DNA from: Haliotis rufescens
Taxonomy: Eukaryota
Reading direction: 5' to 3'
NCBI RefSeq assembly: GCF_023055435.1
Contig: NW_025964223.1
Coordinates: 43,896,001-43,960,000, forward strand
DNA: 64,000 bases
Positions 860-61,427 of this stretch are shown piece by piece. Position numbers and translations under genes: made by a program. The stretch's first letter is position 1, and the number at the start of each line of letters is the position of its first letter. A model generated the notes under the pieces. It saw only the letters and a list, made by a program, of their open reading frames with translations. It was not told the origin of the DNA and did not search any database.

Positions 860-3744
860 ACATAGACGTGAACTGCAGACAGCCAATACCATGCGCGGGT
901 TCCTCTGAGCGAGGTGTGACCAAGGTAGAGCCAACTACAGAACTGACTTCAACGTCTTCAGGTAAAGCAGAACAATACACAGTAATCCACATGTCACATC
1001 ACAGGAGCTGAACGTTGACTCCACAAAAACACATGGTTTTGATTATCAATCTATCTAACTTTTAAGTCGTATTGTTAAAAATTGAATACGGTGTGTTTGA
1101 ATAGAACTACTGCTGAATGTTTAAGAGAATTATACCGTCCGACAAAAGAAACGCGAAAACCATGCATGTTGAGTAGTGAGTGAGTATGGTTTTACGCCGC
1201 TGGTAAAAACTGGTGTTCCCCGCCGTGATACTGCTGGAATATTGCTAAAAGCGGCGTAAACCAATCTCACTCACTCTATATGTTTGGTTAGCGTTTCTTT
1301 TGGCGGTGAGTATGTACTGGAAATCATGTGCAGCATATCGTCATAAGAATAAAGACACTGTGGTAGCATTGGGCGGATTGTTAGTTTTGTCAGAAACTCT
1401 TCTTGACATACATACTTCTCTATATGTTTCTTTTGTTCGCGTTTCTTTTGGCTGTGAGTACATATTGCTTGTAAGCTGGGTGATATTATGCTTTACAGAC
1501 ACAGACGCGAACTGCAGTGATCCATTATCTATGATTCCAAGCACTGGATCCACTCAGCCAGGTGTGACCGAGGTAGAGTCAACTACAGAACTGACCCCGT
1601 CAACGTCTTCAGGTGAGTGAAAGCAATACACAATGATCCACATGGAACACCAAATGATACACGTATGTAAGGTCCAACATCTTACAATTACGTCTTAACT
1701 TTTTAACACATAAGATTTAAATTAAGTACCACAAACCAAAGAAAAGTGATAATACGTCAGGATTATAATAGGACTTTTTCTCACAGACCACAATGCCTAT
1801 AGATTTCTTTTGTTCGCGTTTCTTTTGGCGGTGAGTATATATTGCTTGTAAGCTGGGTGATATTATGTTTTACAGACATAGACGTGAACTCCAGTGATCC
1901 ATTATCCATGATTCCAAGCACTGGATCCACTCAGCCAGGTGTGACCGATGTAGAGTCAACTACAGAACTGACTCAGTCAACGTCTTCAGGTGAGGGAAAG
2001 CAATACACAATGATCCACATGGAACACCAAATTATACACGTATGTAAGGTCCAACATCTTACAATTACGTCTTAACTTTTTAACACATAAGATTCAAAGT
2101 AAGTACCACAAACAAAAGAAAAGTGATAATACGTCAGGATTATAATAGGACTTTTTCTCACAGACCACAATGCCTATAGATTAAAGCTTAGTATGTACAT
2201 GTATGTGTAGTGAGTACGTGGGTTTATTTGGTTTAACGCTGCCTTGCAAAGTACATCAGTTTTATCAATGTGTGTCAGCTTGAGATGTGCGAGGAAGGCC
2301 CGAAGGTCTTTGACTTTCACCACTTCGATTAAAATCACGAACACGGGCATGATGTTGTCCAACCCAAAAGCACATTCAGGCGAATCAAGGATTCGAATTC
2401 ATGATCAAAGATTCCTGGCACGCCAGAGCTACGTAAATCTGAACAAGCGATCTGTTTGTTTAACGCCGCATTCAACACTATTCAAGCTTTATGACGCCGG
2501 GCAATAAGTAATCGAATTTAGAACAAACAATTCAGTGACTGATGTTGAACCCCCTGGTGCCCGCGATAAAAGTGAAGAAGGACATTATGATATCTGACAA
2601 CAGGCATTAGCTAAATCATCTGCTTGGAACACACAATCCAGTGACCGATGTCATGAACATGATATTCGTTTAGCGAGATAAACGCCTCGATTCGGGACAC
2701 GCATTTCCAAATTGCTAAAAGATCATGTGGATAAAGGTCAATGGTAATAATTGTTTGTATAACATTTTCTCATTCTGACATTTGTTTCTCAATGAGTTAT
2801 TATTTACATTGATAAAATTGACAGTTACAATAGCAATATGTGTGCAAACTTGATTTTTAATAGTTACATGGACCGCCTCCGCGGTCTTGTGAATAGGGCG
2901 TCTGCCTGGAAAGCGGAAGGTCAATGGTTCGATTCCCTGGGAGGGTAATACCAAAACTTTAAGAGATGGTATTAGTTGTTACCCTACCTAGCGTTCGTCA
3001 TTATGTTAAGGGTGTAAAAAAAGGGCTGGAGTCAGTGTGATGTATCTGAGTAGGGTCGCACTCGCATAACTCCAGACTAGCACAGTCAGCTACACACACG
3101 GACATATGGGTCGCTATAGCAGTGAAATAGTCTTGAACACGACGTTAATCCCCTTTGTCCTGACCTCAATTCATACATCTAGACACTGTTCATATATCCT
3201 CAAAGCACTTTGACAATGATGGATATGACATCTACTTGCAGAAGCTAGTAGAAGCAGCCACACACGCGCGTGTACACGGCGCTATAAAAGTGCAATATTC
3301 TTGAACGCCAAGTTAAACTTCATTACACCTCCACAAATCCTCTGGGATGAGAAGTGTGGTATGAGGTTATAATTGATAACTTGGTGTACACGTTTAATTT
3401 ATATAAATTAAGTAATCTCTAAATAAATAATCTCCAAATAACACACTACTTGACAGATGTTACGTTTATCACTTAAAGAACTTAGACGACAGGGCCCCTG
3501 GTGCCCGCGATAAAAAAAAAGTGAAGAAGGACATATGATATCTGATAACAGACATTAGCTAAATCAGCTGCTTTCTTTTTCATCATAAACATAAATAGTA
3601 CTGTAGTCGTAGAGCTTTTGATCAGGAATTATTATCGTTCATATCAGTTTCAAGATGCAGTATGTGACTATAGTCATGTTTGTGTCGTCGCTGTTCTCCT
3701 CTGATCACAACATATTTACTCAGATGAGAGGGTGATCGAATAAG

Positions 3745-3807
<63 letters not shown>

Positions 3808-5756
3808 CTGGCAAATCATTAAGACGAGATATTCGTCTTCTATCATAGTGTTACAGAACACGTGTGAAGGTGCTTTTTGTTTCAGGAGTTTTGGAAAATC
3901 TGGCAACTCTTACATCTACACTTCGGTGTAAAGATATTTGGTATATGCTAAATACGAACAGTGAGCCTTTCGTTTTGATTGCCAATCAATCACCAACATG
4001 TCTTATCACATTTGTTTTTGACATTTATTTCACAAGATAATAACAAGGATCTCCTATTGATAGTATCAAAGAATATTTGATGGGAAGAGAACTTTCTTGA
4101 TTCAAACACTCACTAATTATTAAATAAATAAATGTTTTAAAGAAAGAAAAAGAAGCTTATCAGTATTTGTAATTTAATTTAAATAATGAGTTGAGTTGAT
4201 GATGCTCACATGTCTTGCATCAATTTCACACTGGGGACGGGGGCACATGACATGAAAAGCATGACTTATTTCATCATATGTTCAATGTGAAAAATATATG
4301 TTTTATGATTCCGTAGGACTTTACATAGCGTTAGCGGTGATTGGAGGCGTCTTGACGTGCATCGGTGTTGTATGCGTGATATTGTAAGTACACAGTAGAA
4401 GGTGATCATTTTTGTAATGTAAATGTGTGTGAAACGAAAACAAGAGAAATACAAGCATGGACTACTAGAGTTTTGTATGTTAGAAACCGATACATTTTCG
4501 CCGAGGACAAAACGAAAACTAGGGAAAACAGCAGTACATCAGTTTCTTAAATATGAATTTAGAAATTCGTTAACGTTAAGCTTTGCTCTGAAAATCCTCT
4601 TGAAAATATGACTGTTCAACCGATCTTTCCGAATGTTAACTGTATGTTAAATGCATGGTTCTGCGGTGTTGTTTTGTCACAGAAGTAACAAATATAAGGT
4701 TAAACATACAGAGAAAATGGTAGGACAGCCGTTGCAATACGATCCATTTCCAATTCGATAGCAATCGTAGAAATCTTTCTTTTTAGAAAGTATTTATTTA
4801 CTTACAGGGAACATCGGAGGAACCAACACTTTGATGTGCCAGAAGAGACAGTTTGTGATGTTCAAGTGAAGAGGTACAACGAAGACATCATTTTACATGT
4901 TGACCAGGCAGAAAACCAGAAAGAAACGAACGTGCCAGCGGAATGTGCTTGTGAAGAAAACGGAAATAGGAGTGGCCAGGTCATTAATGGCCACTTTGAT
5001 GATGTTGACAACACAGTAAAGAACCAGGAAAATATAATTTACGAATCACAATTGACGGCTTCCTGCAATACTTTGAAACAGTACATCCAGGGCAACGGAG
5101 TGGGTGGAAATTATTATGAGGACGTTGACAACATAACAACGAACCAGAAACAGATCTCTAAATCACATTCGGCAGCCTCGTGTAATGCTCTGGAACAGAA
5201 TAGCCAGGACAAGGGAGTCGGCGGAGATTATGAGGACGTAGACAACACAACCCCATCGCCGGCCTCATGTAATACTCTGGAACAGCATAGCCAGGGCAAG
5301 GGAGTCGGCGGAAATGATGAGGACACAGACAATACAGCAGAGAGCCAGGAAGATTTCGCTGAATCACAATCGACGGCTTCTTCTAATAATCAGAAACAGA
5401 ACAGCCAGGGAGACGAAGTCAGTGGAGGTTATGAGGACATAGACAACACCGCAAAAAGCCAGGAAGATATATCTGGATCACAATCGACGGCTTCTTGTAA
5501 TAGTCTGAAACAGCACAGCCAGAGCAACGAAGTCGGTGGAGATTATGAGGACATGGACAACACAGCGGATGCCAAGGAGCAGCCGACAGGACCAGGAAAG
5601 GTTGAATCTGAACCATGCATTAAGGACATCATACAGGATAATGCATATGAAACAATATCCATCGGAGAGGGTAATCGCAGACCAGCGTCCATTTTACAGC
5701 TTTGTCCCGAGACCATCCTTAAAACTGGTGATGTTTATGCGAAAGTGAAAAAGTGA
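860..5756 (+). CDS. Receptor A1 (5'-truncated by window): type I membrane protein with three stalk exons, TM, and YED-repeat tail
   Basis: Exons 860-961, 1499-1612, 1876-1989 (Ser/Thr stalk, all phase 1-1, AG/GT), 4317-4383 (TM GLYIALAVIGGVLTCIGVVCVIL), 4808-5756 (tail, in frame with ORF 4836-5756, ends VYAKVKK*). The frame stays open across all junctions. Clear paralogue of A2; its signal and ectodomain exons are presumably upstream of base 1. Confidence 0.85.
1425..2180 (+). repeat. Tandem duplication (~377-bp unit) carrying A1 stalk exons 2 and 3
   Basis: 1425-1800 and 1803-2180 are near-identical, including intron flanks. Confidence 0.9.
2870..3150 (+). mobile_element. tRNA-headed SINE (family 2), degenerate
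   Basis: ggaccgcctccg...ggttcgattccc head; same family as 23547-23802. Confidence 0.65.
3749..3805. repeat. (TA)n microsatellite
   Basis: Seen directly in the sequence. Confidence 0.95.
4808..5756 (+). CDS. A1 terminal (cytoplasmic) exon with ~38-aa YED repeats
   Basis: Acceptor ttacag at 4802-4807. Phase 2 join gives L-EHRRNQHFD-VPEET. Repeats YEDVD/YEDID/YEDMD. Confidence 0.88.
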
Positions 5757-9076: not shown

Positions 9077-12000
9077 ATGATGCAGTGGATGTTTGCTGTA
9101 ATAGCTGTTGGATTATCTGCCTTGGTCAATGTCTGTCAAGCAGAAGGTAAATACTATACAAAGCATCAATAATATGGTATAGAGATCTAGGACATACAAA
9201 TAATATTGATTTGAAATTAACGGTAACTCCATTATCGACTTTCTGATAAGTTTATAGGCATAAGCGAGATTTGTACCGTGAGTGACCCTCACATGGCCAT
9301 ATCCACGTATCTGGAACCTTTAAACCCACAGATATTGACTGTTGGAGCCAAAGAAAGGCGGCTAAAATAGTGAACATGCGAGTGTTCATGTTATATTGAA
9401 CATTGTTCTGTTATGACGCCCCCTGCACCGTCTACTTTTGTAGGTTTTATGGACGAATAGTAGTAGTACCGTAACGGTACTGCATTGTAACCTGATGCCT
9501 GGCGTAAAATCACTGTATGGCGTCATAAAAGAATGTAACTGCCCATTACGAATGGAGAGAATTATATCATTACGCACGTTTTCTTTTGTTATGTTGTGAA
9601 ATATGTAGGATGCTAACACATTGATATTATGATGTTTTGGTATAGATAAACGTTTCATCCATAAGTGGTTACAGCTTTCAAAAAAGTTAAATATTTTTAT
9701 TATGCGTGTATGCTAAAATACGTATATTTTCAAAAGTAAAAAAATTGAACAAAATTGAATAAAAATTACCCGTTAAATATTTTCAAAGTACTTCATACGA
9801 CTCTTGCTCCAAAGCTGTCTGATCACTAATACAACATTCAAGGCCAAAATAGTTTTATGATAGACATATGGAGAACATTTCCAAAAGTGTCGGTCCAGTG
9901 ACAAAAATCATGTTTAATGCAATTCCCTATTTTGACTTGTATCATAAACTTTATTCCCGTGGTCTATTTTCGGTGAACCATTTTTAGGCCTTTGCAAGTG
10001 TTTGTGACGGGTGGCAGCAGTGTGGCAGAAAATGGTCACCTTTCAGCAAACACTCGGTATCATCACTATTTCATAGTGATCAATAAACACATGCTCATGG
10101 TGCAGTCACAATAGTAAACTTGAAATTTCTTATGACCGTGGAAATGATTTCGTCGCTGTTTTAAGTACTATAGGAGAACTATTTTGTACAAATAACACAT
10201 ATAAGATGGTAGACGCGCGTTTTTTCTTAATTTTGAAGTTTATGTTTGACAAATTCCCGTTATTCTTTGTTTCTGTAGGTTCTCTGGGTGAATTGATCCA
10301 ATTATTGGCAAATTTCATGTTTCTCCAAGCGTTGTTTGCAAGTTTTATTTATAAAACATACGCTTTTCCTTAGCTTCTACTCCAACTCCCTTTACAGACC
10401 CCATATATTAGTATATATTTGCCAGAGAGTCTCGGGGCCCAAAAAGTAACCATTAGACACACAGTTTCAAGTGAAACTTTCTGGATTAATGAAACAGTTT
10501 AGTGAACAGTGTGCCCTGTGTCAAATATATTTATTACTTACCCGTTAACTTTGCTAGAAATTGTCTATCTATTTGACTTTTTCTGTTGCATTGATGGCAT
10601 ATATGTGACAACTACATCACATAAGGTGAAATTGTTTTGCAGAGGTGGAGATGTGCAATGAGGGATATGCGAGCGCACAGAACATCAATCTGACAATAGC
10701 TTTGACTCCATCTTCCTTTAGATGTTGTTGTCATCTAGATTTCAAAGCAGCTCAGACAGTATGGAGAAGGACGACTGTGGACTGTGGAATAACGCTTGTT
10801 CATGATGTAACATTCCTTGACAAAAACTGTAGTCAAAATACCAGCATTTCTCAGGCGGTCGATCAGAATAAAACAGATCTGTGTGTTGTTCGGGAGAACG
10901 GCCTTCAACAGAACAAGTCACTCACAGGCCATATGATATTGCAAGCGACAAGTTATGGTATTGTATTCAGTCTGAATCCTTATCTATTATATCATGCAGG
11001 ATGTACAGCATCACTCTATTATCTTAATGTTGTTGGCTTCTATCCCTTGGTAATTTGTAATGTTTGACTTTGACGTACAACTGATCAACCTGATATGTTT
11101 TTCATTTTGCTCGTTATTAAAACTATCATACAATTTGTTTAAAAAGTATTTCAAAACATGATCAGAAATATTGTTTTCTAGCATAGTTTAGTAACGATCA
11201 TCTAGAACTTCAATACAAATAGATTGATGTTAACAAACTGACACGCTTTGCGTCAATTACAACCTATCCGATGTTCGTAGGAGATGTAATGCTTGTTGAC
11301 TACAGTAATATAATGTTGTACAGACATAGACGTGAACTGCAGTGAGCCAGTTTTGATGAGTCCAAGCACTGGTTCCAATCCGCCAGGTGTGTCCGAGGTG
11401 AAGCCAACTACAGAATCAACTACTCCGTCAACGTCTTCAGGCAAGGAAGAACAAAACACAATGATCCACATGGAACATCAAATGATACATGTACATAATA
11501 TTACAATAATGCATTTAATTATGTCTAAACACACAAGCTAAACGTTAAACATCACAATACCCAAAGGTTGATATTTGATAATACGTCAGGATTATTTATA
11601 GGCTTCAACACTTCATCTTTGGTGTAAATTGTATGATCACAGCACACGATGCCCATTTGTTAATGTATAATATGAATGTGTTGTGAGATCCGTGAGTGAG
11701 GTTGGCTTCACACTGCATTGAACAGTATTAGAGTTATACCACGATGTGTCAGTTGACAAAGGAGAAAAGCCCGAAGTGATGCAAGTCTTAGACGTTAACA
11801 CATTTGGTTAAACCCATGAGCACGGGTATGATGCTACATACCCGATGAACGTACCGATATCTGCTGTACATGTAACAAAAACATTATATTAGTTCAAAAA
11901 CTAACTGTTTTCTCGCGAAAGATTTGATACAATAAAAGAGATAGTTTAAATTGAAGATGAACATTATCAGAGTGTATTAGGATCAGAAACGTTTCAAAAG

Positions 12001-13344
12001 AGAGTCTGATTAAAACGTTCTGGGGACATGAAAAGCATCAATATTTTCAATGTGTAAAATATATGTCTCATGATTCCGTAGGACTTTACATAGCGTTAGC
12101 GGTGGTTGGAGGCCTCTTGATGTGCATCGGTGTTGTATGCGTGATATTGTAAGTACACAGTAAAAGGTGATCATTTTCGTTATGTAAATGTGTGTGGAAA
12201 AAAACAGGGAAAAACTCACGACCTTAGCAGTACATCAGTTTGTTAAATATGAATTTAGAAATTTGTTAACGTTCAGAAATTCGCATTTACAATTTAACGT
12301 TACGCATTCACTCTGAAAAAAATCTTTCCGAATGTTAACTGTATGTAAAATGCATGGTTCTGCAGTGTTGTTTTGTCACAGAAGTAACAAATATAAGGTT
12401 AAACATACAGAGAAAATGGTAAGATAGCTGTTGCAATACGATCCATTTCCAAGGCGATAACAATCGTAGAAATATTTCTCTTTAGAAAGTATTTATTTAC
12501 TTGCAGGGTACATCGGAGGATCCAAAACTTTCCTGTGCCACAAGAGGCAGATTGTGATGTTCAAGTGAAGAGGTACAACGAAGACATTATTTTACATGTT
12601 GACCAGGCAGAAAACCAGAAAGAAACAAACGTGCCAGCGGAATGTGCTTGTGAAGATAACGGAAATAGGAGTGGCCAGGCCATTTATGGCCATTTTGATG
12701 ATGTTGACAACACAGAAAAGAACCAGGAAAATATAATTTACGAATCACAATTGACGGCTTCCTGCAATACTCTGAAACAGTACATCCAGGGCAACGTAGT
12801 GGGAGGAGATTATTATGAGGACGTTGACAACACAACAACGAACCAGAAACAGATCCCTGAATCACAATCGACAGCTTCGTGTAATTCTCTGGAACAGAAT
12901 AGCCAGGACAAGGGAGTCGGCGGAGATTATGAGGACGTAGACAACCCAACCCAATCGACAGCCTCATGTAATACTCAGGAACAGTACAGCCAGGGCAAGG
13001 GAGTCGGCGGAGAATATGAGGACATAGACAACACAGCAAAAAGCCAGGAAGATATCTCTGAATCACAATCGACGGCTTCTTGTAATTATAGTCTGAAACA
13101 GCGCAGCCAGGGCAACGTAGTCGGTGGAGATTATGAGGACATGGACAACACAGCGGATGTCAAGGAGCAACCGGCAGGACCAGGAAAGGTTGAATCTGAA
13201 AGATGCATCAAGGACATCATACAGGATAATGCATATGAAACAATGTCCATCGGAGAGGGTTATCGCAGACCAGCGTCCATTTTACAGCTTTGTCCCGAGA
13301 CCATCCTTAAAACTGGTGATATTTATGCGAAAGTGAAAAAGTAA
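9077..13344 (+). CDS. Receptor A2: complete type I membrane protein, predicted 468 aa
   Basis: Exons 9077-9146 (signal peptide MMQWMFAVIAVGLSALVNVCQAE), 10643-10957 (Cys-rich ectodomain), 11324-11440 (stalk, GC donor), 12082-12148 (TM GLYIALAVVGGLLMCIGVVCVIL), 12507-13344 (tail). Sum is 1407 nt = 469 codons, with no internal stop. Confidence 0.87.
10643..10957 (+). CDS. A2 Cys-rich ectodomain exon (315 nt)
   Basis: ttttgcag acceptor and G|gtattg donor. Pattern C-x22-CCC...C-x14-C...C. Several N-glycosylation sequons (NLT, NCS, NTS, NKT, NKS). Confidence 0.85.
12507..13344 (+). CDS. A2 terminal (cytoplasmic) exon with YED repeats
   Basis: ttgcag acceptor, in frame with ORF 12535-13344, ends IYAKVKK*. 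Confidence 0.88.
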
Positions 13345-14814: not shown

Positions 14815-14978
14815 TGAGTGAGTGAGTTTGGTTTTACGTCGCTTTTAGCAATATTCCAGCAATATCACGGCGGGGAACACCAGAAATAGGCTTCACACAT
14901 TGTACCCATGTCGGGAATCGAACCCGGGTCTTCGGCGTGACGAGCGAAGGCTTTAACCACTAGGCTACCCGACCGCCC
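14815..14978 (-). mobile_element. tRNA-derived SINE (family 1, ACTC tail)
   Basis: A/B-box head on the minus strand; 11-bp TSD TGGACATGCAG on both sides. Confidence 0.9.
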
Positions 14979-28339: not shown

Positions 28340-28341
28340 CC

Positions 28342-28372
<31 letters not shown>

Positions 28373-31789: not shown

Positions 31790-31955
31790 GGGCGGTCGGG
31801 TAGCCTGTTGTTAAAGCGTTCGCTCGTCACGCCGAAGACCCGGGTTCGATTCCCGACATGGGTACATTGTGTGAAGCCCATTTCTGGTGTCCCCCGCCGT
31901 TATATTGCTGGAATATTGCTAAAAGCGGCGTAAAAGCATACTCACTCACTCACTC
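31790..31955 (+). mobile_element. SINE family 1
   Basis: Full-length copy with TSD agatcaggt. Confidence 0.9.
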
Positions 31956-41100: not shown

Positions 41101-41627
41101 ACTTTGGAGCAGTCATGGATCCTGGTGGATACTGAGTCACCTGATAGATTTATCCCGTATGTCCATCTTGTAAGGTGTTATAATGTTGGTGATTGTGATG
41201 ACATTATGTGTTTTATTGCAGTTGGTATCCTTGCCGCTGGACTTGCTACAGTAGCTGTGCTAGTCGTCATGGCTTGTGGAACATACGTCGCCATATCAAG
41301 GTTCATATGTTTAAGACAACCAACTAAACGTCATCTTCAAACGTTATCTTGTCAACACAAATGTAGACGACTAAATAGAACATGCAGCTTAACTTGACGA
41401 GTATGTGTAACGGTTGGTATCAGTGGAAAATGTTGGTGTAATAAACAAGATGAATTATGGTGTTGTGTTACAGACGAAGACGCCGGACATCCCACCGTCA
41501 GAAGCCTGCAGCTAACGACATTCCGATCTCTGTTGTCCATCCCACCTACTCAGGGCTCACGTCCAGAACAGAGGAGCCAAACAGCATCTATGACACAATA
41601 GACAATCCATATACCAGTGTGCCATAG
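35181..41627 (+). CDS. Receptor C1: complete type I membrane protein with ITAM-like tail, predicted 271 aa
   Basis: Exons 35181-35232 (signal MDVLLTLVFLSLPSVSS), 39316-39681 (ectodomain), 40338-40502 (stalk DLLNIECFEPNTNSS...), 41222-41300 (TM VGILAAGLATVAVLVVMACGTYVAI), 41474-41627 (tail ...HPTYSGLTSRTEEPNSIYDTIDNPYTSVP*). Sum is 816 nt = 272 codons. Confidence 0.85.
35566..35728 (+). mobile_element. SINE family 1 in C1 intron 1
   Basis: Full-length copy with aaagtac TSD-like flanks. Confidence 0.88.
36210..36688. mobile_element. MITE with ~80-bp TIRs and 9-bp TSD (Mutator-like), nested in a tRNA-headed SINE
   Basis: TIRs caatatcattaaaatcaga...gtcacgtcaga and tctgacgtgac...tctgattttaatgagattg. 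TSD ccccaaaaa (36201-36209) and ccctaaaaa (36689-36697). Confidence 0.85.
38816..38984 (+). mobile_element. SINE family 1 in C1 intron 1
   Basis: Full-length copy with TSD ctcaa[c/t]ggcgatgt. Confidence 0.9.
39316..39681 (+). CDS. C1 Cys-rich ectodomain exon
   Basis: Within ORF 39279-39767. tgtcaag acceptor conserved in C2 and C3; G|gtgaga donor. Confidence 0.85.
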
Positions 41628-45800: not shown

Positions 45801-47227
45801 TTTATACACATACGGCAACACAGCTATACAAGTAGTAACAATGACACATGTTTGAAGTCGTATCTATTATACACTTACTTCCTGCTGGTGGTAAACATTA
45901 CCGTACATTTCTGTACTTTGTATACCCCATGCTGTAACATGGGCGTATATGTCACCACCGGCCGTGTCCTTGAAGTGTCGTTAACGATTTCCAATAAACA
46001 CCTTGAATGACGCATGTTTATGGGAGACTAAACTGGAATGAACCTGGTGTAAATGGAGGTTTCATGTCAGACTCGCTGTGTAGATTAAGCGTGACATAAA
46101 CTCACTTGAAAACGAATTATACTTCCAGCTGGTCTGTTTAGGTGATGCAAACGGCAAGGAGGTCAACGGATGAGGGTGAGGAAGTAGTGGAAACGGTTTT
46201 CAGAGTTGAGTAATTATAAGACAAAGACGTCTGCGCTGTTTCACATGACGGGTGTTGGTGTATTTGGGCATGTTCGTGTACCTATTTCTGTACAACAATA
46301 AAAAACGAGTTATTTCGATTACATATTTTTTGACTAAATATCAAGATTTTGTTTACATGTATCTGTGGCGGTAGAATTCAGAATTATTAAATTGACAATT
46401 CTTGAAATAGAGACAAGAATTTTGTTTAATAGCTTCATGCATGCCTATATACATACATACACTTCTTCGTGAATCTGGACCCGACCGGTCCGGAAATCCA
46501 ACCCTCTAAAACATTACACTGTAGTCAATATTACACAATCCTGAATATGCCTACCCGGCCGATTTATTAGGAAAGGTACAGTCGGGAATAACGAGACTTC
46601 ACAGGATATGTGCCTGGGATATCGAATTATACACAAAGGCGAGATTGGTAGTCATATATACAAAGACCAATTATTATAGCATTTGTTACAAAGCCACTGG
46701 GGCATAACTCAAAGGCTGCTATCGAGGATCACACAACCATCAACTTCCTGGTTGGATGTGAATGTCACCAGACGTATATCACTACAAAGAAGTGCATCTA
46801 AAATTAGATCATCATGGACGTCTTGTTGACTCTCGTTGTCCTCACACTGCCGTCAGTAATCTAAGGTAAGATTTCAGCCATATACCAGTAATTATGTTAC
46901 ATAATAGACTGTGTAACAGGCGCCCAGTCAACATTGCTCTTCATGTGTCAGTGGTCTATATATACTGGTTTTGTACGTATGTCACCCAGACATTAGGATA
47001 TCTTTCTGTTTGTAAACTTTCTATAAACATGTGAGTAGATGTCCGAGTTGCCTACAAAGACCCCTGATAGTTTACACGTATTTATTTGTTGAACGAGTTC
47101 ATTGCAGTACATATTCTTATTATAGTCGTACAAATCACGATTTGCTTGATCGCCCAACCACCGAGACCAAAATAGTTATAATAATAGGCTATTTAATTCG
47201 CATATTTCCACGCCATGCTCAAAGCGC

Positions 47228-49752: not shown

Positions 49753-50100
49753 TTCTACAGACCTGTTCTTCTGGGACAGAGACAGGCTCCAACCAAATCC
49801 TACTGGATGTGTCTACAACACAGATCAACACAGGGGGAGGGATGTGTTCCTGTAGGCTGACTGTGTCACAGACAGCACAGGTGGGGTTGTTCCCTATAGG
49901 ATGGACACAACAGTGTGATACATACATGACTATACAGAAGTGGAGGGCTAGTTCACAGTGTACAAATGGTGTTGGTCAAACTATACCTGGACAGATTCAC
50001 ACTGTCACCACTAGTGAGGAGACATGGATACTGGTGGTGGCTCTGCCTGGAGCCAGGGGACTGTCTGGACAGCTGCAGTTCAAGCTTCAATCGTCATCAG
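49753..50100 (+). CDS. C2 ectodomain exon (open frame)
   Basis: Overlaps ORF 49809-50120; paralogous to the C1 and C3 ectodomain exons. Confidence 0.7.
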
Positions 50101-50226
50101 GTGAGAGATGTGAGGGCTAAAAATGATCGAAGTTATGATATTGTTTTGACATAAAAATGTATTAATAATGCCATTGTACATATTGATATAGATGTAAATG
50201 TTCCATTTAAACATAAACACTGGTAG

Positions 50227-50354
50227 ACAATGTACAACAAATGGACTTGTTCAAACAATATCTGCACAGTCTCTCGCCGGTCACCACTGGTGAGTAGATA
50301 TGGATACTGGTGATGGCTACACCTGGAGCCAGAGGACTGTCAGGACAGCCGCAG
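50227..50354 (+). pseudogene. Degenerate intronic copy of the 3' half of the C-type ectodomain exon (C2 intron 2)
   Basis: Matches the QCTNG...WILV...PGARGLSGQ coding sequence, with an in-frame TAG (gagtagatatgg). Confidence 0.7.
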
Positions 50355-52282
50355 AAGTGAACAAAAACCTTATGTATTATGTTAATGGTGTTCGCAATGA
50401 AACTTTAATTTTGCTTCCTCAAAATCCAAAAAAATGTATTTTCTATAAATAGGAAGAACCCGTGTAATAGTATTCTGATTTCGCAAGATCCAGGAAATTA
50501 TTTCTTTATAATGATATTTATATTCTACGGGGCATTCACATCACATCCTCAAGGGGAATTTCAAAACAATTGAAGACAATAGTATTGATGCTTCGCTTTC
50601 ATTTCAGCAGGCCAGCTAAAGATAGATTGTTTTGAGCCAAACACTAACAGTTCCACAACTACCCCTCTTTCAACAACCTCGGTTTCAACATCTTCGTCGA
50701 CATTAACTACAACCACTTCTCCCAAAACAACAGCAGTAACGACAACTACAGAGATACGTATATCCACACAAAAGCCTACCACAGAGACACAACTTCCAAC
50801 CTCCATTACTCCTCAAGGACAAACGACATCTTTGTCGACTGGTGTAACTGCAGGGGCAGAGACTACTAAAGCTACTACAACTCAGATCCCAAAGAAAAGC
50901 TTTCCAGGTACAAATTTCTTAAAATGTTTATTACTCATGTGGTTTGAAGCGTGATTGCTGCAAACCCTATCATGGTTGAAGGTATGTAGATAACACAGTT
51001 ATTTCTATAGAGGGCACCAATTCTTTCCTACACCTAAAATTAACAAGACGATTTGTATTGTTCATACTCATTTTACAAAATATTTGTCATAAGTCATGCA
51101 TGACACACTCGTGGATATAGTGCCCGCATTATATGCCCTTATTTTCCTGCCATCGGTAGACAGGTTTTCCTGGAATAGTTTTTTCAACTCAATAATAAAA
51201 TATGTTCATGTACTGGTGAAAAGTATTATTGAATGTTCCTTGAAACTTCATTGTATTAAGGGAATGTTTCCTTGATGTCTAAACCAGGAAATACAATATT
51301 TCAGTTACACTGCAGTGTTTCATTATAATCCGAGAAGAAAACCCAAAGTGATGCTCGTGGTAGGTTACGGGTGTAATGTGAGGCACAGAAGCATCCACCA
51401 AGGGTCATAATCAAAACATATCTGTACATATAACACTTCGGAGCAGTCCTTGGATCTTGGCAGTAACTAATATATGAGACAGATTCGTCCCGTGTCTCCA
51501 CATAGTAAGGTGTTATAATGTCTGTGATTGTGATATCATTATGGGTTTTATCGCAGGTGGTATCTTTGCTGCCGGACTTGCTACAGGTGTCGTGCTGGTC
51601 GTCATTGCTGGTGGACTATACGTCGCCATATCAAGGTACAGACATTGAAGCCAACTGACTCTATAAATGTATGCTTTGTCAACACCAATGGTCAAGGCTG
51701 ATCGGTACATGTAGACAAACATGGAGATTCTATGTAACAGTTGTTCGAAGTGGATAATGTTACTTTAATTAAACATGATTAATAATGGTTTGTTTTGCAG
51801 AAGATGGTGTAGGTCCCGCCACGAGAAGTCTGATGACATTCCAGTCTCTGAAGTCCACCCCACCTACTCAGGGCTCAAACCCAGAACACAGGAGCCGAGT
51901 AACACCTATGACATAATAGATCCAAATCCCTCAAAGGGCACAGCAAATCCATACATCAATGTGACATAGATATACTGCAATTTGTTTTGCATCTTGTTTA
52001 ACGAGAGAAGGGTTAATTTAGTAGCCCTGGTTACCACAATTATTTTAACATTGATTGGATGCATCTAACATATTCAGTCTCAGTGTATGTTGTGTGTATA
52101 TGAACAACCGCGTACGTTCAAATCTGGAGCCTGTGTTTCACAATGCGTGGATATGGACATCCGTACATGTGCATGTAGATCCAGGACTTTGTACCACACG
52201 CCATGACTAATAAGGACATTACGTGCACTGCAAATCAAATACATGCCTACGCCTAAAGTTGAAATCCAAAAGAGAGTTAACG

Positions 52283-54350: not shown

Positions 54351-57300
54351 ATGGACGTCTTGTTGACTCTCGTTGTCCTCACACTGCCGTCAGTAAGCTC
54401 ATGTAAGAACTCAGCCATATGCTGGTAATTATGTTTAACTTATACACTATGTAATAGGCGCTCAGTCAACATTGCTCTTCATGTGTCAGGTATTGGCTTT
54501 GTACGTATGTCACCCATACATTATTAGGTCATCTAACTATGTGAAATTTATCTTTTAACACGTGAGTAGATGTCCGAGTTGCCCATACAGACCCAGGATA
54601 GATTTCACGGTTTTATTTGTTGAACGAGTTCATTGCAGTACATATGCTAAGTGTTCTATCAAATTTGAGACTCTTCTGTGTTGTTGGTCAGAGAACATAA
54701 TAAGATCTCCAATATACATGAAGTTAAATTACGATTCGATTGCTTACCCAGCCGCCGAGACCAAAATAGTCAAAATAATAGGCTATTTATATTGCGCATA
54801 TTTCCACACCACTGCTCAAAGCGCTATTATTACCCCGGTCACTGGATCAATGTGCACTTAAGAATCATTCCCAGCTCCCTGGGGAGTATACAACCCAAGA
54901 TGCCTGCTAGAAGGTTAACAACCACATGTTCATCTCATCCTTTCGGGTACCCATTCACTGCTGGGTGGAAAGAGGCACATTTCGAAAAAGGTCACTTGCC
55001 CAAGGAGACGCCACATGTGTTATATGTGCTTCAGGCTAAGGCAGAACGGAAGTCCTAGAAACTGTCAGGAGCCAAGCTGCCGAAACGCGGTCACCCATTC
55101 AAGGACGCTCCGCGACCGACGCTGATAGCCTATCTCTTTCCAATAGATCGTATCCTTATTAACAGTATGTATACCACCCGACGATGTTTCATAGACTCAA
55201 TGAGTAATATGTAAAATTGTAAACTTGCACATATATGATGAGTTCATTTGACTTAATTCCACCCCGTCCTGTTTTCTACGTCCCATTTCCAATACGTCTA
55301 AATGTGGAAGTTGTAACACCATAGTGTACTTCTAAGCCATGCCAGTGTCGCTTCATTTTCCCAAGCGCGAAACGAGTGTGTTTTAATTCCTGCAATATAT
55401 TTTTCATAATTATCCCTGTTAGGTGATTTAAATATGGTGGTAAAATGTGTGCGTTGTGTAAGCGAACATTCTGGGAAATATAGCCGATCTGTGATTGTTA
55501 CTGATTCCTGAATTCTTACATACAAAATACAGTCGACTGTGTCAAAGGGAGTCACTCATCACTTCTACTATAACCAAAGAGAATGTGTTTGCTGAGATAT
55601 TGCTGATACGACATTAATTGTACCTCACCCACTTAGAACACAGAAGTATCATTATAATAATCTCCTTAAAATCAAATCTTTTACTCCGTAATTCTCGTGA
55701 TAGGAGGTCGAATCAGGTGATCAGGTGTTACTTGAAAAGGAACATAATCGAGGAGATCCGATTGCTAAAAAGAGTAAAGCCGCGCTAATACATAGTTGTG
55801 GACATTTTAAACATTATGGCATCTACACCCAAAAGGGTGCATTAATCGTGGGTCATTTTGTTTTCTGTGGTGGATTTCTTTTGCTGAGATCGAAATTTCC
55901 GAATGTTGGTGATAGAAAAATAACCCATATGTGTAAGAGAAAGCTGACATCTAACTTGCCCTCGCATACTTTATCAGTTTGATTGGGCGGTCACAACTCG
56001 CTCAGGGTTCACCTGACGCCACCTTCTGTTGGGTATCGGAGTAGAAAATCTGATTTAAGTGAGATTGATATACATAAGGAAACTCAGTAGGTAAAATCTC
56101 TGTCACTCACTTAGAAAACAGAAATAACATTATCTTTACTCCTACACGATTCCTCTCTGCGTGGAGATCTGAGACAGGTGGTCGAGTCAGGTGAACTTTC
56201 TAATCAACCAATCAGCGTCGAGGCTGCCATATTCTCGGCACCAGTGACAAAAGCATTCAGACAAGCAAATTTGATTTCTGTTACTCGAAAACGAATATAA
56301 CTGAGGAGTTCCGTAGCCAAAATGTATAACCGCACTATTGCTGTTGTGGATATGTTGAACATCCACCCGTTTCTGAGCGCCATGACATCTATACCCAAAC
56401 CGGGGCACTATCGAGGGAATTTTTGTTTTCTATGGTTGTACAGAAACGAAGTGGAACATAAATAAAGCAGATACCTCTTACAAAACTTACACATGAACGT
56501 CTCACGCATCCTAATTGTGTTTATTGGTACCGTCTGCGGAGATGTATGGGAGTAAACTTGAGTGAGACTGATATATACAAAGAAACCCAGTAGTTATAAA
56601 CACGACTGTAACACTACGCACTGATCTTTGTCATACATCAAATCATTTATGACACTGGTTATTGTCTTCTACCAACTGAATTGTCTTATGATATAAACAT
56701 GATATTTAGAATCTGACGAAAAGTATTAACATAATGTGTTTTTTCGGTATGGATATCGGCGTATGTGTACATGATGTACTGTATTTCCGTGTAACTGTAG
56801 GGTGTGACCGTTAAAACATAATTTGTATTTACTGTCAAGGTCTACAGACATGCTCCTCTGGGACAGAGACAGGCTCCAACCAAATCCTACTGGATGTGTC
56901 TACAACACAGATCAACACAGGGGGAGAGATGTGTTACTGTAGACTGATCGTGTCACAGACAACACAGGTGGAGATGTTCCCTACTAGCTTGACAGAACAA
57001 TGTGATATATCCATAACCATAAAGAAGTGGAGGACTAGTTCACAGTGTACAAATGGTGCTGCTCAAACTATACCTGGACAGACTCACACTGTCAACACCA
57101 GTGAGGAGATATGGATACTGGTGGTGGCTACAAGACCTGGAGCCAGAGGACTGTTAGGACAGCTGCAGTTCAGGCTTAAATCGTCATCAGGTAAGAAATA
57201 TGAGGGCTCAAAAATGATCGAATTGATTATATTGTTTTGACATAAAAATGTATTAATAATATACATTTGGATATAGATGTATATATTCCATTTAAAAAGA

Positions 57301-59019
57301 AAAACGGGTAGACAATGTACTACACATGGAGTTGTTCAAACTGCACCAGCTCAGTCTCTCACCGTCAACACTGCTGAGTAGATATGGATACTGGTGGTGG
57401 CTACTTGGTCTGGATACAGAGGACTTTCAGGACAGCTGCAGTTAAAACTTAAGGCAACTTTAGAAGTGAACAAAAACCTTATGTATTATGTTCATGGTGT
57501 TCGCAGTTAAATTTTAATTTTCACATCATAACCCCAAGGGGATTCTCAAAACAATTAAAGACAAATAGTATTGATGCTTCGTTTTCATTTCAACAGGCCA
57601 GCTGAACATAGAGTGTTTCGAGCCAAACACTAACAGTTCCACTTCAACAGGCTCGCTTTCAACAAAAACGTTGACATTTACCATTACAACTTCTCCCAAA
57701 ACAACAGCAGTAACGACAACTACAGAGAGACTTACATCTACACCCCCGCATACCACAGAGACACTGCGACCAACCGCCATCACTCCTCAAGGACAGACCA
57801 CATCTGTGTCTACTGGATTAACTGCAGGGCCAGGGACTACTAAAGCGACATTCACTACAACTCAGATCTCCATGAAAGGATGTCAATCGCGTAACAATGA
57901 CTTTCCAGGTACAACTTCCTAAATGTTTCTACGCATATGGTTCAAAGCGTGGCACGCACTCATGCATGTAATGCCCACATGATATGCCCTTATGTTTCTG
58001 CAATCGGTAAATAGATTATTCAGCAATGGTTTTATCAACTCAATGATAAAATATGTTCATGCACTGGTGAAAAATATGCATTCAATGTTCCTTGAAACTT
58101 CATTGTATTAAGGGAATATTTCCGTGATGTCTGAACCAGGAAATGACAATATTTCAGTTACACTGCAGTGTGTAATTATAATCCGAGAAGAAAACCCAAA
58201 GTGATGCTCGTGGTAGATTACAGTGAGTGAGTGAGTATGGTTTTACGCCGCGTATAGTAATATTCTAGCAATATCACGGCGGGGGACACCAGAAATTGGC
58301 TTCACACATTGTACCCATGTCGGGAATCGAACCCGGGTCTTTGGCGTGACGAGCGAATGTTTTAACCACTAGGCTACCCGATCGCGCCTGTGGTAGATTA
58401 CAGGTATAATGTGAAGCACAGAAGCATCAATATCTTACTGACAAACCAAGGTTCATAATCGAAAAACATCATGCTGTACATATAACACTTCGGAGCAGTC
58501 CTTGGATCTTGGAAGTAATTAAGACATGATACAGATTCATCCGGAGTGTCCACATAGTAAGGTGTTATAATGTCTGTGATTGAGACAACATTATGGGTTT
58601 TATTGCAGGTGGTATCTTTGCTGCTGGAGTTGCTACAGGTGCCGTGCTGGTCGTCATTGCTGGTGCACTATACGTCGTCACATCAAGGTACAGACATTGA
58701 AGCCAAATGACTCTAAATGTATGTTTTGTCAACACCAATGGTCAAGGCTGATCGGTACATGTAGACAAACAGGGAGATTATATGTGGCCGTTGATAGAAG
58801 TGGACAATGTTGCATTAATTATACATGATTAATTATGGTTTGTTTTACAGAAGATGGTGGAGGTCCCGCCATGAGAAGTCTGATGACATTCCAGTCTCTG
58901 AAGTCCACCCCACCTACTCAGGGCTCAAACCCAGAACACAGGAGCCGAGTAACACCTATGACATAATAGATCAAAACCCCTCAAAGGGCACAGCCAATCC
59001 ATACATCAATGTGACATAG
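54351..59019 (+). CDS. Receptor C3: complete type I membrane protein with ITAM-like tail, predicted 320 aa
   Basis: Exons 54351-54402 (signal), 56840-57190 (ectodomain), 57597-57908 (Thr-rich mucin stalk), 58609-58687 (TM GGIFAAGVATGAVLVVIAGALYVV), 58851-59019 (tail ...TYSGLKPRTQEPSNTYDII...NPYINVT*). Sum is 963 nt = 321 codons. Confidence 0.85.
54825..55140 (-). mobile_element. Paralogous copy of the 5S-like SINE (C3 intron 1)
   Basis: Near-identical to 47228-47570. Confidence 0.55.
56840..57190 (+). CDS. C3 ectodomain exon
   Basis: Overlaps ORF 56896-57240; G|gtaaga donor. Confidence 0.85.
57312..57463 (+). pseudogene. Degenerate intronic copy of the 3' half of the ectodomain exon (C3 intron 2)
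   Basis: GVVQTAPAQSLTVNTAE*IWILVVAT...GLSGQLQLKLK, with the same TAG as the C2 copy. Confidence 0.7.
58224..58388 (-). mobile_element. SINE family 1 in C3 intron 3
   Basis: 14-bp TSD gtggtagattacag; empty site in C2 at ~51357. Confidence 0.92.
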
Positions 59020-59329: not shown

Positions 59330-59490
59330 GAGCGAGTGAGAGATCTGGGTCTTATGCCAACTGTAGCAATATTCCAACAACATCTTGGCGGGCGACACCA
59401 AGGCTTCACACATTGTATCCATGTAGGAATCGAACATGGACCTTTGGCGTGACGACTGTATGCTTTAACCACTAGGCTATCCCATCGCCC
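59330..59490 (-). mobile_element. SINE family 1, degenerate, 3' of C3
   Basis: Equivalent insertion to 52283-52440. Confidence 0.7.
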
Positions 59491-60459
59491 CGAACACAGT
59501 GGATCCTGATGACATAGACAGGAATAATTCATATTTAATATTATTACACGTTGTTCATGTGTCTTCATTCTTGTCACCGTCTGTTGATATCCGTTACCAT
59601 TCTTGTGGAAGGGAGAACTAATGTCGTCATGGTCATACCGAACAAGTCAATCGTTTACTAATTTGATTATAGGCGAACAGTTTTTCGTTCGTCTTGTTCA
59701 AACATTCAATGTCTTTTCTCAACACACAACATTGACTTTAGCGCCGTGATGCTGCTTTGCATCAAGTATATAGACTGTCTATATAGGATGAGGCCTTGCA
59801 GTGTGGTAATACCGGTTAGTGTTATAGAGTCATGGTTGTATATAGGCCTTCTGAATAGAAAGGGAAATCGAAGGTCGGATGACCAAGTCGTCCAAGGCGG
59901 CGGAATGGTTTGTCAGCCCACACTCGTGAGTTTCACCAAAGCTGCAATATTGCATCACATTGGGCGTTCCTCTCATACAGTTCAAAGCAGAGTTTACCCC
60001 ACGATTACCCTATAATTCTTCTTTCCAAATTCTATTTCAACACACTAGTTTATGCCTATTACATTGATAATCACAACATTATTGTTTTATATAAGGGATC
60101 AACAACGTCCCAAACACGAGGAGGACTACTTATCTAAAGAAATACTAACATTAGGACGTTAACGTCTAGTTCTGTTTATACACATAAGGCAGCACAGCTA
60201 TACAAGAAGTAACAATGACACATGCTTGACGTCGTTTCATGCTTGACGTATATGTCATCACCGGCTGTGTCCTCAGAGTGCTGTTAATGATCTATAAGAA
60301 ACTCAGTGACTGACGCATGTGTATGTGAGATTTAACTGGAATAAATCTCGTGTACTTTCAGGTTTCATGTCAGACTCACCTGGTAGATAAGGCGTGACAC
60401 AAACTCACCTATAGCTGATCTTTTTAAATGATGAAAACGGTAAGGATGGTCAACAGATG

Positions 60460-60752: not shown

Positions 60753-61375
60753 CTTAAGATGAGGATTAGGAAGTAGTGGAAACGGTGTACAGAGTACTGA
60801 GTAAGCATAAGACAAACAAATCTGTGCTGTTTCACATGAAGGATTGTTGGTGTTTTGAGGTATGTTCGTGTACCTATTTCTGTGCAGCAACAAAAAGCGA
60901 GTTATTTCGATTACATATTCTTTGACTAGATATCTAGATTCGTTTACTAAGCATTATGAAATCGACAATTCTTGAAATAGAGAGGTCCGATATAGAACAT
61001 ATCCCTTCATGCATGCCAATATACATATACACTCTTCTTCGTTAATCTGGACCCGACTGGTACGGAAATCCAACCCTCTAAAACATTATACTGTAGTCAA
61101 TATTACATAACCCTGAAAATGTCTACCCGGGCGTTATATTAGGAAAGGTACAGTCGGGAATAACAAGACTTTGCTGAAAATGTTTCTTGGATATCAGATT
61201 ATACACAAAAGCGAGATTGGTGGCCATACAAAGACCAATAGCATTTGTTACAAAGCCACTGGGGCATAACTCAAAGGCTGCTATCGAGGATACCACAGCC
61301 ATCAACTTCCTGGTTGGATACGAATGTCACCAGACGTATTTCACTACAGAGAAGTACATCTAAAATTAGATTATC

Positions 61376-61427
61376 ATGGACGTCTTGTTGACTCTCGTTG
61401 TCCTCACACTGCCGTCAGTAACCTCAG
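61376..61427 (+). CDS. Receptor C4 signal-peptide exon (rest of gene expected beyond window)
   Basis: MDVLLTLVVLTLPSVTS G|gtaaga, near-identical to exon 1 of C1-C3 with the same upstream block. Confidence 0.75.

What the first reader, a model, noticed from the sequence alone, without database searches (positions are those of the whole stretch)
860..61427. Hidden cluster of seven paralogous tyrosine-motif receptors that looks like an invertebrate paired-receptor locus
Seen in sequence: manual splicing gives seven head-to-tail + strand genes (A1, A2, B, C1, C2 pseudogene, C3, C4 partial). All use the exon and phase plan signal(1)-Cys ectodomain(1)-stalk(1)-TM(2)-tail, and the spliced lengths are exact multiples of 3. 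A2 and B even share exon sizes of 70, 315 and 67 nt. One ectodomain type is coupled to three unrelated tails: a YED array plus YAKV (A), ITAM-like (C), and a tail with neither (B). Established: clustered receptors with homologous, variable ectodomains and opposing tyrosine-based tails are the hallmark of paired immune receptor families (KIR, LILR, CD300, fish NITRs). Inference: this is an uncharacterised molluscan immune or cell-recognition receptor family built on a non-Ig ectodomain. I do not recognise it as any named gene.
Basis: partly seen in the sequence, partly recalled or inferred. Interest (0 to 1): 0.9.

Follow-up and report, generated by a model that had tools for sequence, protein, structure and literature searches.

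The report
Abalone-only cluster of tyrosine-tailed membrane receptors
The window holds part of a tandem cluster, found only in abalone, of single-pass membrane protein genes that share a small cysteine-rich outer domain but carry different tyrosine-motif tails; the genes are real and mostly already annotated, but an immune "paired receptor" role is not shown.

Summary
The window is Haliotis rufescens chromosome DNA (G000:C445:43,896,001-43,960,000).

- **Exon sizes:** A2 and B share the 70, 315 and 67 nt exons.
- **C2:** its signal exon carries a TAA stop.
- **C4:** only the signal exon, ending at 61427, lies in the window.
- **A1:** its signal and ectodomain exons lie upstream of base 1.
- **Support:** the splice junctions match RefSeq proteins at 99-100% identity. 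For C1 they also match spliced transcript contigs from three studies.
- **Assembly gaps:** both N gaps are intergenic.

The cluster is not hidden. B, C1 and C4 have full RefSeq models and A2, C2 and C3 truncated ones, named "uncharacterized" or "DAN4-like". It is also larger than the window: about 13 genes over roughly 375 kb.

A profile search of 1.84 billion proteins found the family only in four Haliotis species. The ectodomain has no Pfam match. Its predicted all-beta fold resembles CUB domains best (Z 8-9), without sequence support. The C tails carry a conserved ITAM-like double-tyrosine motif.

The paired-receptor reading is not supported. There is no conserved ITIM, and ectodomains of different tail classes are only about 20% identical. 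Function is untested.

The parts
860..961 (+). A1 stalk exon copy a (phase 1-1, 102 nt)
   Evidence: AG/GT sites and frame; 67% identical to the stalk of H. cracherodii P0002
1499..1612 (+). A1 stalk exon copy b (114 nt), closest to the orthologue
   Evidence: 90% identical to P0002 residues 130-168
1876..1989 (+). A1 stalk exon copy c (114 nt), from a 377-bp tandem duplication; the stalk Cys is lost
4317..4383 (+). A1 transmembrane exon (67 nt, phase 1-2)
4808..5756 (+). A1 tail exon: repeated 29-39-codon modules with 4 x YED[V/I/M], then YET and C-terminal YAKV
9077..9146 (+). A2 signal exon (70 nt)
10643..10957 (+). A2 ectodomain exon (315 nt, phase 1-1, 7 Cys)
11324..11440 (+). A2 stalk exon (117 nt) ending at a GC donor
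   Evidence: read through in the H. cracherodii models P0009/P0019
12082..12148 (+). A2 transmembrane exon (67 nt)
12507..13344 (+). A2 tail exon (YED array, YAKV); 100% identical to XP_048240404.1
19468..19537 (+). B signal exon (70 nt)
   Evidence: matches the N-terminus of the H. cracherodii orthologue P0021
23174..23488 (+). B ectodomain exon (315 nt, phase 1-1, 9 Cys)
   Evidence: 99% identical to XP_046363395.2
25922..25969 (+). B stalk exon 1 (48 nt, holds the conserved stalk Cys)
26207..26248 (+). B stalk exon 2 (42 nt)
27018..27084 (+). B transmembrane exon (67 nt)
27655..27958 (+). B tail exon (conserved YYQG, YLxD, C-terminal FVY; no ITAM or ITIM)
35181..35232 (+). C1 signal exon, coding part (52 nt)
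   Evidence: 100% identical to XP_046363306.2 residues 1-18
39316..39681 (+). C1 ectodomain exon (366 nt, phase 1-1, 5 Cys)
   Evidence: (spliced contigs)
40338..40502 (+). C1 Ser/Thr-rich stalk exon (165 nt)
41222..41300 (+). C1 transmembrane exon (79 nt, phase 1-2)
41474..41627 (+). C1 tail exon CDS: YSGL-x10-YDTI and NPYTSV; the 3'UTR continues to at least 42074
46814..46865 (+). C2 signal exon with an in-frame TAA at 46862-46864
   Evidence: the RefSeq C2 model XP_048240048.1 starts inside the ectodomain
49753..50100 (+). C2 ectodomain exon (348 nt)
50216..50354 (+). C2 degenerate copy of the 3' half of an ectodomain exon, with stops
50608..50907 (+). C2 stalk exon (300 nt)
51557..51635 (+). 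C2 transmembrane exon (79 nt)
51801..51969 (+). C2 tail exon (YSGL-x10-YDII, NPYINV)
54351..54402 (+). C3 signal exon (intact; not used in the RefSeq C3 model)
56840..57190 (+). C3 ectodomain exon (351 nt)
57301..57468 (+). C3 degenerate second half-ectodomain pseudo-exon (in-frame stop)
57597..57908 (+). C3 stalk exon (312 nt)
58609..58687 (+). C3 transmembrane exon (79 nt)
58851..59019 (+). C3 tail exon (YSGL-x10-YDII, NPYINV)
61376..61427 (+). C4 signal exon; the rest of C4 lies beyond the window (ectodomain at G000:C445:43969579)
   Evidence: the N-terminus of XP_048240046.1 matches

Best explanation
The window covers the 5' part of a tandem gene family specific to the abalone genus Haliotis. 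The family has about 13 genes, all on the + strand, spread over roughly 375 kb of one H. rufescens chromosome.

Each gene encodes a type I single-pass membrane glycoprotein with five parts:
- a signal peptide;
- one cysteine-rich all-beta ectodomain of 104-122 residues, encoded by a phase 1-1 exon, with a predicted jelly-roll fold most like a CUB domain;
- a Ser/Thr/Pro-rich, mucin-like stalk that begins with a conserved strand carrying one Cys;
- a transmembrane helix;
- a cytoplasmic tail specific to the subfamily.

Tail types:
- C: a conserved double-tyrosine ITAM-like motif plus a distal YxN or NPxY.
- A: four internally duplicated modules, each with YED[V/I/M], plus a C-terminal YAKV.
- B: other conserved tyrosines.
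- The last C-type gene, outside the window: a repeated xYAVV array.

Shown here: the gene structures, transcription and splicing of C1, the restriction to Haliotis, the faster change of the ectodomain than of the tail, and the motif conservation.

Inferred: these are cell-surface receptors. On this reading the variable ectodomain binds an extracellular ligand and clustering leads to tyrosine phosphorylation of the tail by Src-type kinases. SH2 proteins then dock on the tail: a Syk/Shark-type kinase for C, others for A. Which ligand and which tissue are involved is unknown.
For: - **Gene models:** they match public RefSeq proteins at 99-100% identity.
- **Transcription:** C1 junctions are seen in spliced contigs of three studies, against an unspliced DNA-like run.
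- **Copy number and location:** own-genome searches place all ectodomain and tail copies in one + strand array between 43.68 and 44.06 Mb.
- **Shared ectodomain framework:** invariant C4, G7, L17, C31, C33, C59, C74, V100 and G111 across A, B and C. B links to C (P 2e-4) and to A (P 1.6e-4) by hhalign. All three use the same phase 1-1 exon of 315-366 nt.
- **Fold:** the AF2 model of the C1 ectodomain has pLDDT 80 and pTM 0.70 and is all-beta. The top VIA matches are CUB domains: Kremen Z 9.1, rmsd 3.0, 101 residues aligned; also neuropilin, MASP-1, cubilin, TSG-6, PCPE-1, C1s and spermadhesin. The A2 model (pLDDT 66) hits the same CUB chains at Z 7.6-8.0, alongside GOLD and collagen-binding domains. 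The nearest named ESM-Atlas clusters are CUB families, scores 0.83-0.87. Cys spacing 4/31/54-59/69-74 parallels genuine Haliotis CUBs at 1/27-31/54-63/76-80.
- **C tail:** Yxx[L/F]-x10-YDx[I/L] is kept in every full-length C-type tail recovered from the four Haliotis species. The strict ITAM pattern occurs in 0.5% of composition-matched shuffles.
- **Rates of change:** ectodomain dN/dS 0.35-1.5 against 0.18-0.39 for the tail.
- **Precedent:** ITAM-Syk signalling exists in molluscs, shown for oyster CgIgR (PMC6994640).
Against: - No Pfam family matches any member.
- The family profile has no PDB sequence match.
- There is no profile-profile similarity to genuine CUB domains of the same genome.
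- Foldseek finds no match at E <= 0.001.
- VIA Z of 8-9 is only just above the usual background of 7-8, so the CUB-like fold is a moderate inference.
- In H. rubra, H. asinina and one H. cracherodii paralogue the first motif is YSGF or YAGF, which is not the canonical YxxL/I.
- YxxPhi and NPxY motifs can equally be endocytic sorting signals.
- No phosphorylation, ligand or tissue data were available.
- RefSeq does not join A2's ectodomain to its tail, and its models of C2 and C3 lack a signal peptide.
Confidence: 0.6

Rival explanations
1. A true paired immune-receptor locus: activating ITAM-like C genes and modulatory or inhibitory A and B genes recognise related ligands on haemocytes, in the manner of KIR, LILR, CD300 or NITR.
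For: - Clustered paralogues share one ectodomain framework and carry several tail types.
- The ITAM-like motif is conserved.
- The ectodomain evolves faster than the tail.
- A YAKV end fits the published Csk-SH2 preference (my own knowledge).
Against: - No conserved ITIM or ITSM is present. The only ITIM-pattern hits are single-species ones: C1 SIYDTI and H. asinina B SPYGHV.
- Ectodomains across tail classes are about 20-25% identical, and A versus C is not significant. Shared ligands are therefore unlikely.
- There are only two A genes and one B gene against about nine C genes.
- No evidence of haemocyte or infection-linked expression was available.
Confidence: 0.12
2. Mucin-like surface glycoproteins whose tyrosine motifs (YxxPhi, NPxY) are trafficking signals for AP-2 or Dab-type adaptors. 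On this reading they are endocytic or adhesion proteins of epithelia, not signalling receptors.
For: - Long Ser/Thr/Pro stalks are present; RefSeq auto-names include 'integumentary mucin C.1-like' and 'DAN4-like'.
- YSGL, YDTI, YINV and YAKV all fit YxxPhi, and NPY is present.
Against: - The exact x10 spacing of the two tyrosines, and the flanking residues HPTYSG...EEPxNxYD, are conserved across four species. That is more than sorting signals need.
- The A tail repeats YED[V/I/M] four times inside duplicated modules, which is typical of docking arrays.
Confidence: 0.2
3. Fast-evolving gamete or larval recognition proteins, in line with abalone's well-known fast-evolving reproductive proteins.
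For: - The family is restricted to the genus.
- Ectodomain dN/dS approaches or exceeds 1 between recent duplicates.
Against: - There is no similarity to lysin, sp18 or VERL/ZP families (no Pfam hit).
- Tandem arrays with signalling-type tails are not a feature of the known abalone fertilisation proteins (my own knowledge).
- Transcripts occur in runs of three studies of unknown tissue.
Confidence: 0.06

Closest known systems
CUB-domain transmembrane scaffold receptors CDCP1 (Trask) and DCBLD2 (ESDN)
   Same: Type I membrane proteins with divergent CUB or CUB-like ectodomains and tails carrying several tyrosines, or repeated tyrosine motifs, that dock SH2 proteins after Src-family phosphorylation (my own knowledge). 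The fold search puts CUB domains on top, and some ESM-Atlas neighbour clusters carry the CDCP1_CUB_6 family.
   Different: No sequence homology to any CUB was found. There is a single small domain on a mucin stalk. The motifs differ: ITAM-like, YED[V/I/M] or YAVV rather than YxxP. The genes form a genus-specific tandem array.
Oyster CgIgR, an ITAM-bearing haemocyte receptor (PMC6994640), and Drosophila Draper
   Same: Invertebrate single-pass receptors with an ITAM in their own tail. The consensus used there, YxxL/I-x6-12-YxxL/I, is met by C1-C3. CgIgR binds Syk in a mollusc.
   Different: Those ectodomains are Ig (CgIgR) or EGF/EMI (Draper), not this cysteine-rich beta domain. Syk binding and immune function are shown for them and untested here. 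In three of the species the first motif ends in F.
Vertebrate paired-receptor clusters (KIR, LILR, CD300, fish NITR)
   Same: Tandem clusters of type I receptors with variable ectodomains and alternative tails, showing pseudogenes and copy-number change (C2; degenerate exons).
   Different: No ITIM members and no charged TM residue or adaptor logic were seen. Ectodomains differ strongly between tail classes. The fold is not Ig.
CUB domain (Pfam PF00431)
   Same: About 110 residues, a beta sandwich, a phase 1-1 exon and a four-Cys layout with similar spacing.
   Different: It fails the Pfam model and a profile-profile comparison with genuine Haliotis CUBs. It has an extra Cys pair partner in the stalk. 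The Ca-binding residues were not assessed.

Membership tests
CUB domain (PF00431) | Match to the Pfam CUB profile at or above its gathering score | tested here: not met
   No CUB hit for any of 20 family members even at E <= 10
CUB domain (PF00431) | Profile-profile similarity to genuine CUB domains | tested here: not met
   hhalign of the family profiles against 9 CUB exons of the same genome: P 0.2-0.5
CUB domain (PF00431) | Beta-sandwich fold of about 110 residues that superposes on solved CUB domains | tested here: inconclusive
   C1 model (pLDDT 80): the top VIA hits are CUB domains at Z 7.0-9.1, rmsd about 3 A, 95-103 residues. Foldseek finds nothing at E <= 0.001. The A2 model (pLDDT 66) gives CUB, GOLD and collagen-binding domains tied at Z about 8.
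CUB domain (PF00431) | Four conserved cysteines (C1-C2, C3-C4) with typical spacing | tested here: inconclusive
   The spacing is similar (4/31/54-59/69-74 against 1/27-31/54-63/76-80). Disulfide pairing was not determined.
ITAM-bearing receptors | Yxx[L/I]-x6-12-Yxx[L/I] in the cytoplasmic tail of a membrane protein | tested here: met
   C1 YSGL-x10-YDTI; C2 and C3 YSGL-x10-YDII. The pattern occurs in 0.5% of shuffles. Orthologues in H. rubra and H. asinina have YSGF or YAGF at the first site.
ITAM-bearing receptors | Dual phosphorylation and binding of the tandem SH2 domains of a Syk-family kinase | not testable with these tools
   Needs biochemistry. The precedent in oyster is PMC6994640.
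Paired activating/inhibitory receptor clusters (KIR, LILR, CD300, NITR) | Clustered paralogous receptor genes | tested here: met
   About 13 genes in one + strand array
Paired activating/inhibitory receptor clusters (KIR, LILR, CD300, NITR) | Inhibitory members with conserved ITIM or ITSM | tested here: not met
   No conserved [SIVL]xYxx[IVL] or TxYxx[VI] in the A or B tails across species
Paired activating/inhibitory receptor clusters (KIR, LILR, CD300, NITR) | Closely similar ectodomains on members with opposing tails | tested here: not met
   A, B and C ectodomains are 20-25% identical. A versus C is not significant; B links to each only at P about 2e-4.
Paired activating/inhibitory receptor clusters (KIR, LILR, CD300, NITR) | Expression on immune cells | not testable with these tools
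   Run identities and tissues are coded

The most novel reading that the evidence does not exclude
Abalone independently evolved a diversified receptor array on a CUB-like, non-Ig domain. Many ITAM-like activating genes with fast-changing ectodomains would sit beside a few genes with docking-array tails (YED/YAKV, YAVV) that tune the signal. This would be a genus-specific variable recognition system for pathogens, self/non-self or gametes, analogous in logic to KIR, LILR and NITR.
Probability: 0.12. Interest if true: 0.8.

Novelty: new variant of a known kind. Interest (0 to 1): 0.45.

Why it matters
If the tails do signal, this would be a genus-restricted, tandemly expanding family of ITAM-like receptors built on a domain with no detectable sequence relatives. 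It would give a tractable case of how invertebrates invent and diversify surface receptors by shuffling phase-1 ectodomain exons onto different tail exons.

There are practical points as well. Abalone are farmed and threatened by disease, so a variable haemocyte receptor family would be of applied interest.

The report also corrects misleading automatic names ('cell wall protein DAN4-like', 'integumentary mucin') and flags truncated RefSeq models for A2, C2 and C3, and the lack of an A1 model.

Tried and rejected
- **Pfam** on the exons and on 20 family members: nothing relevant.
- **Family profile against PDB sequences:** no hit at E <= 10.
- **Foldseek against PDB:** only weak generic jelly-roll hits, TM <= 0.45.
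- **hhalign of family profiles against genuine Haliotis CUB exons:** not significant. Membership of the CUB family is therefore not claimed.
- **hhalign A versus C directly:** not significant.
- **First guess for the C signal exon** (MNVSRILIV... at 49363 and 56493): rejected in favour of the conserved MDVLLTL exon, which RefSeq proteins confirm.
- **Paper search** for the LOC and XP identifiers: none found.
- **ARAGORN** on the window, to test the SINE-like repeat: no tRNA.
- **Spliced models:** joined spliced models were never sent to a search tool. Exons were searched one by one by reference, and full-length comparisons used public proteins returned by the tools.
- **Reads:** The C1 signal-exon junction lay outside the 6,000 bases that were laid.
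- **N gaps:** they were not filled or looked up.

Full report
**What the window is.** The window is eukaryotic DNA of about 40% GC with large tandem duplications. Public proteins identical to its exons identify it as Haliotis rufescens (red abalone), on a 63.3-Mb chromosome record, at G000:C445:43,896,001-43,960,000.

**Check of the observation.** I rebuilt every gene model from splice sites and reading frames.

- A2 is 70 + 315 + 117 + 67 + 838 nt.
- B is 70 + 315 + 48 + 42 + 67 + 304 nt.
- C1 is 52 + 366 + 165 + 79 + 154 nt.
- C2 is 52 + 348 + 300 + 79 + 169 nt.
- C3 is 52 + 351 + 312 + 79 + 169 nt.

All sums are multiples of three. The introns after the signal, ectodomain and stalk exons are phase 1, and the intron after the TM exon is phase 2. 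The shared 70, 315 and 67 nt exons of A2 and B are exact.

C2's signal exon has an in-frame TAA at 46862-46864.

The start coordinate 860 is the first of three A1 stalk-exon copies. A1's own signal and ectodomain exons lie about 360-1260 nt upstream of base 1.

The two N gaps lie about 500-570 nt downstream of the A2 and B stop codons. No model crosses them, and they were left as they are.

**Independent support for the models.** RefSeq or orthologous proteins reproduce the models:

- C1 = XP_046363306.2 (271 aa, 100% on all five exons).
- B = XP_046363395.2 (281 aa).
- C4 = XP_048240046.1.
- The A1 orthologue in H. cracherodii is XP_071114775.1 (473 aa).

Contigs from three transcriptome-like runs of three studies join 39316-39681, 40338-40502, 41222-41300 and 41474 onwards exactly. 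A DNA-like run runs unbroken through the intron. The 5' 100-266 nt of those contigs fall outside the laid 6 kb, as expected if the signal exon is at 35181.

**'Hidden' is not correct.** B, C1 and C4 have full RefSeq models. The others are incomplete:

- A2's model holds only TM plus tail (XP_048240404.1).
- The C2 and C3 models start at an internal Met of the ectodomain (XP_048240048.1, XP_048240047.1).
- No H. rufescens A1 model was found.

Names such as 'cell wall protein DAN4-like' or 'integumentary mucin C.1-like' come from the Ser/Thr-rich stalk. No paper mentions these loci.

**Extent of the family.** Six-frame searches of the whole genome place every copy in one + strand array:

- A-type ectodomains at 43.685, 43.895 and 43.907 Mb, plus a fragment.
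- A-type tails only twice.
- B once.
- C-type ectodomains about nine to ten times, from 43.935 to 44.047 Mb.
- ITAM-like tails eight times.
- The last C-type gene followed by a different long tail at 44.058 Mb. This is the orthologue of H. rubra XP_046582666.1, with repeated xYAVV motifs.

A profile of A, B and C ectodomains searched against 1.84 billion representative proteins gave 11 real hits. All are from H. rufescens, H. cracherodii, H. rubra or H. asinina.

**Is it one ectodomain type?** The alignment of A, B and C keeps nine invariant positions: C4, G7, L17, C31, C33, C59, C74, V100 and G111. All three types are encoded by one phase 1-1 exon of 315-366 nt. Each is followed by a stalk that opens with a conserved [L/I/V]x[L/I/V]xC strand.

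Statistically, B links to C (P 2e-4) and to A (P 1.6e-4), but A versus C is not significant. Common origin is likely, but the classes are very divergent, at 20-25% identity.

**Fold.** No Pfam or PDB sequence match exists. The evidence on the fold is as follows.

- AlphaFold2 with the family alignment gives an all-beta model for C1 (pLDDT 80, pTM 0.70).
- Foldseek finds nothing clear.
- The exhaustive VIA search puts CUB domains at the top. Kremen scores Z 9.1; neuropilin, MASP-1, cubilin, MAP-1, TSG-6, PCPE-1, C1s and spermadhesin score Z 7-8.4.
- The weaker A2 model (pLDDT 66) hits the same CUB chains, tied with GOLD and collagen-binding domains.
- The nearest named ESM-Atlas clusters are CUB families, at scores that count as leads only.
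- The Cys spacing parallels genuine Haliotis CUB exons.
- Profile-profile comparison with those genuine CUBs is negative.

I therefore call the domain CUB-like in fold, at moderate confidence. I do not file it as a CUB family member.

**Tails.**

- **C tails:** C1-C3 read HPTYSGL-x10-YD[T/I]I followed by NPYTSV or NPYINV. The strict ITAM pattern is met, and arises in 0.5% of shuffles. The two tyrosines and their spacing are conserved in the full-length C-type tails of all four species, but the first site is YSGF or YAGF outside the rufescens/cracherodii copies.
- **A tails:** they are built from tandem 87-117-nt modules, each with one YED[V/I/M], and end in YAKV.
- **B tails:** they keep YYQG, YLxD and a C-terminal FVY, but no ITAM or ITIM. 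The one ITIM-like site in H. asinina is Phe in H. rufescens.

No conserved inhibitory motif exists anywhere in the cluster.

**Evolution.**

- Between C paralogues the ectodomain has dN/dS 0.35-1.5, and above 1 for three recent pairs, though on few synonymous changes. The tail has 0.18-0.39.
- For C2 versus C3, dN is 0.109 in the ectodomain and 0.016 in the tail. Neutral divergence is about 0.16 (5' part) and 0.11 (3' part).
- The ectodomain is thus weakly constrained or diversifying. Positive selection is not demonstrated.
- Degenerate second half-ectodomain exons in C2 and C3, and a two-domain protein in H. rubra, show that the ectodomain exon itself duplicates.

**Interpretation.** The best-supported reading is a genus-specific family of type I surface glycoproteins. 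They act as receptors whose tails are tyrosine-phosphorylated docking sites, in the way of CDCP1/DCBLD2-type CUB scaffolds and of ITAM receptors such as oyster CgIgR. Phosphorylation, partners, ligand and tissue are all inferred.

The paired-receptor reading fails two defining tests: inhibitory motifs, and near-identical ectodomains on opposing tails. Trafficking-signal and reproductive readings remain open.

**Limits.**

- Only one read-laying run was available.
- The scan had already noted the C tail, the A tail and the C2/C3 contrast on this same window. It had also noted an unrelated 'paired receptor' candidate elsewhere in this genome.

Noticed in passing
14813-14978, 31790-31955, 35567-35728, 38816-38983, 58222-58388, 59331-59491: A SINE-like element of about 165 bp, in both orientations. 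It is extremely abundant in every run laid (summed depth above 1e5). ARAGORN calls no tRNA in it.
   Followed up: partly
50216-50354 and 57301-57468: Degenerate copies of the 3' half of the C ectodomain exon, with in-frame stops, just downstream of the real exon in C2 and C3. H. rubra XP_046566231.1 has two full tandem ectodomains, so a two-domain form existed or still exists.
   Followed up: partly
1420-2182: A recent 377-bp tandem duplication (95% identity) doubles the A1 stalk exon. With the older copy at 860-961, A1 has three spliceable phase 1-1 stalk exons, and which are used is unknown.
   Followed up: partly
11441-11442: The A2 stalk exon ends at a GC rather than a GT donor. H. cracherodii RefSeq models of the A2 orthologue (182-184 aa) read through this site and end without a TM. 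A2 may therefore yield a secreted form, or be split.
   Followed up: partly
24038-25528; 17003-18746; 29283-30371: Three large arrays: a 34-bp minisatellite (x43) inside B's intron between the ectodomain and stalk exons, a 27-bp array (x65) between A2 and B, and an (AGTG)n-like array next to the second N gap region.
   Followed up: no
G000:C445:44046588-44059299 (outside the window): The last C-type ectodomain of the array is followed by a long tail exon with repeated xYAVV motifs, the orthologue of H. rubra XP_046582666.1. This is a fourth tail type on the same ectodomain family.
   Followed up: partly
G000:C445:43684626-43684934 (outside the window): An isolated A-type ectodomain exon lies 211 kb upstream of the cluster with no A-type tail nearby. 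A 129-aa Logan protein (P0008) matches it.
   Followed up: no
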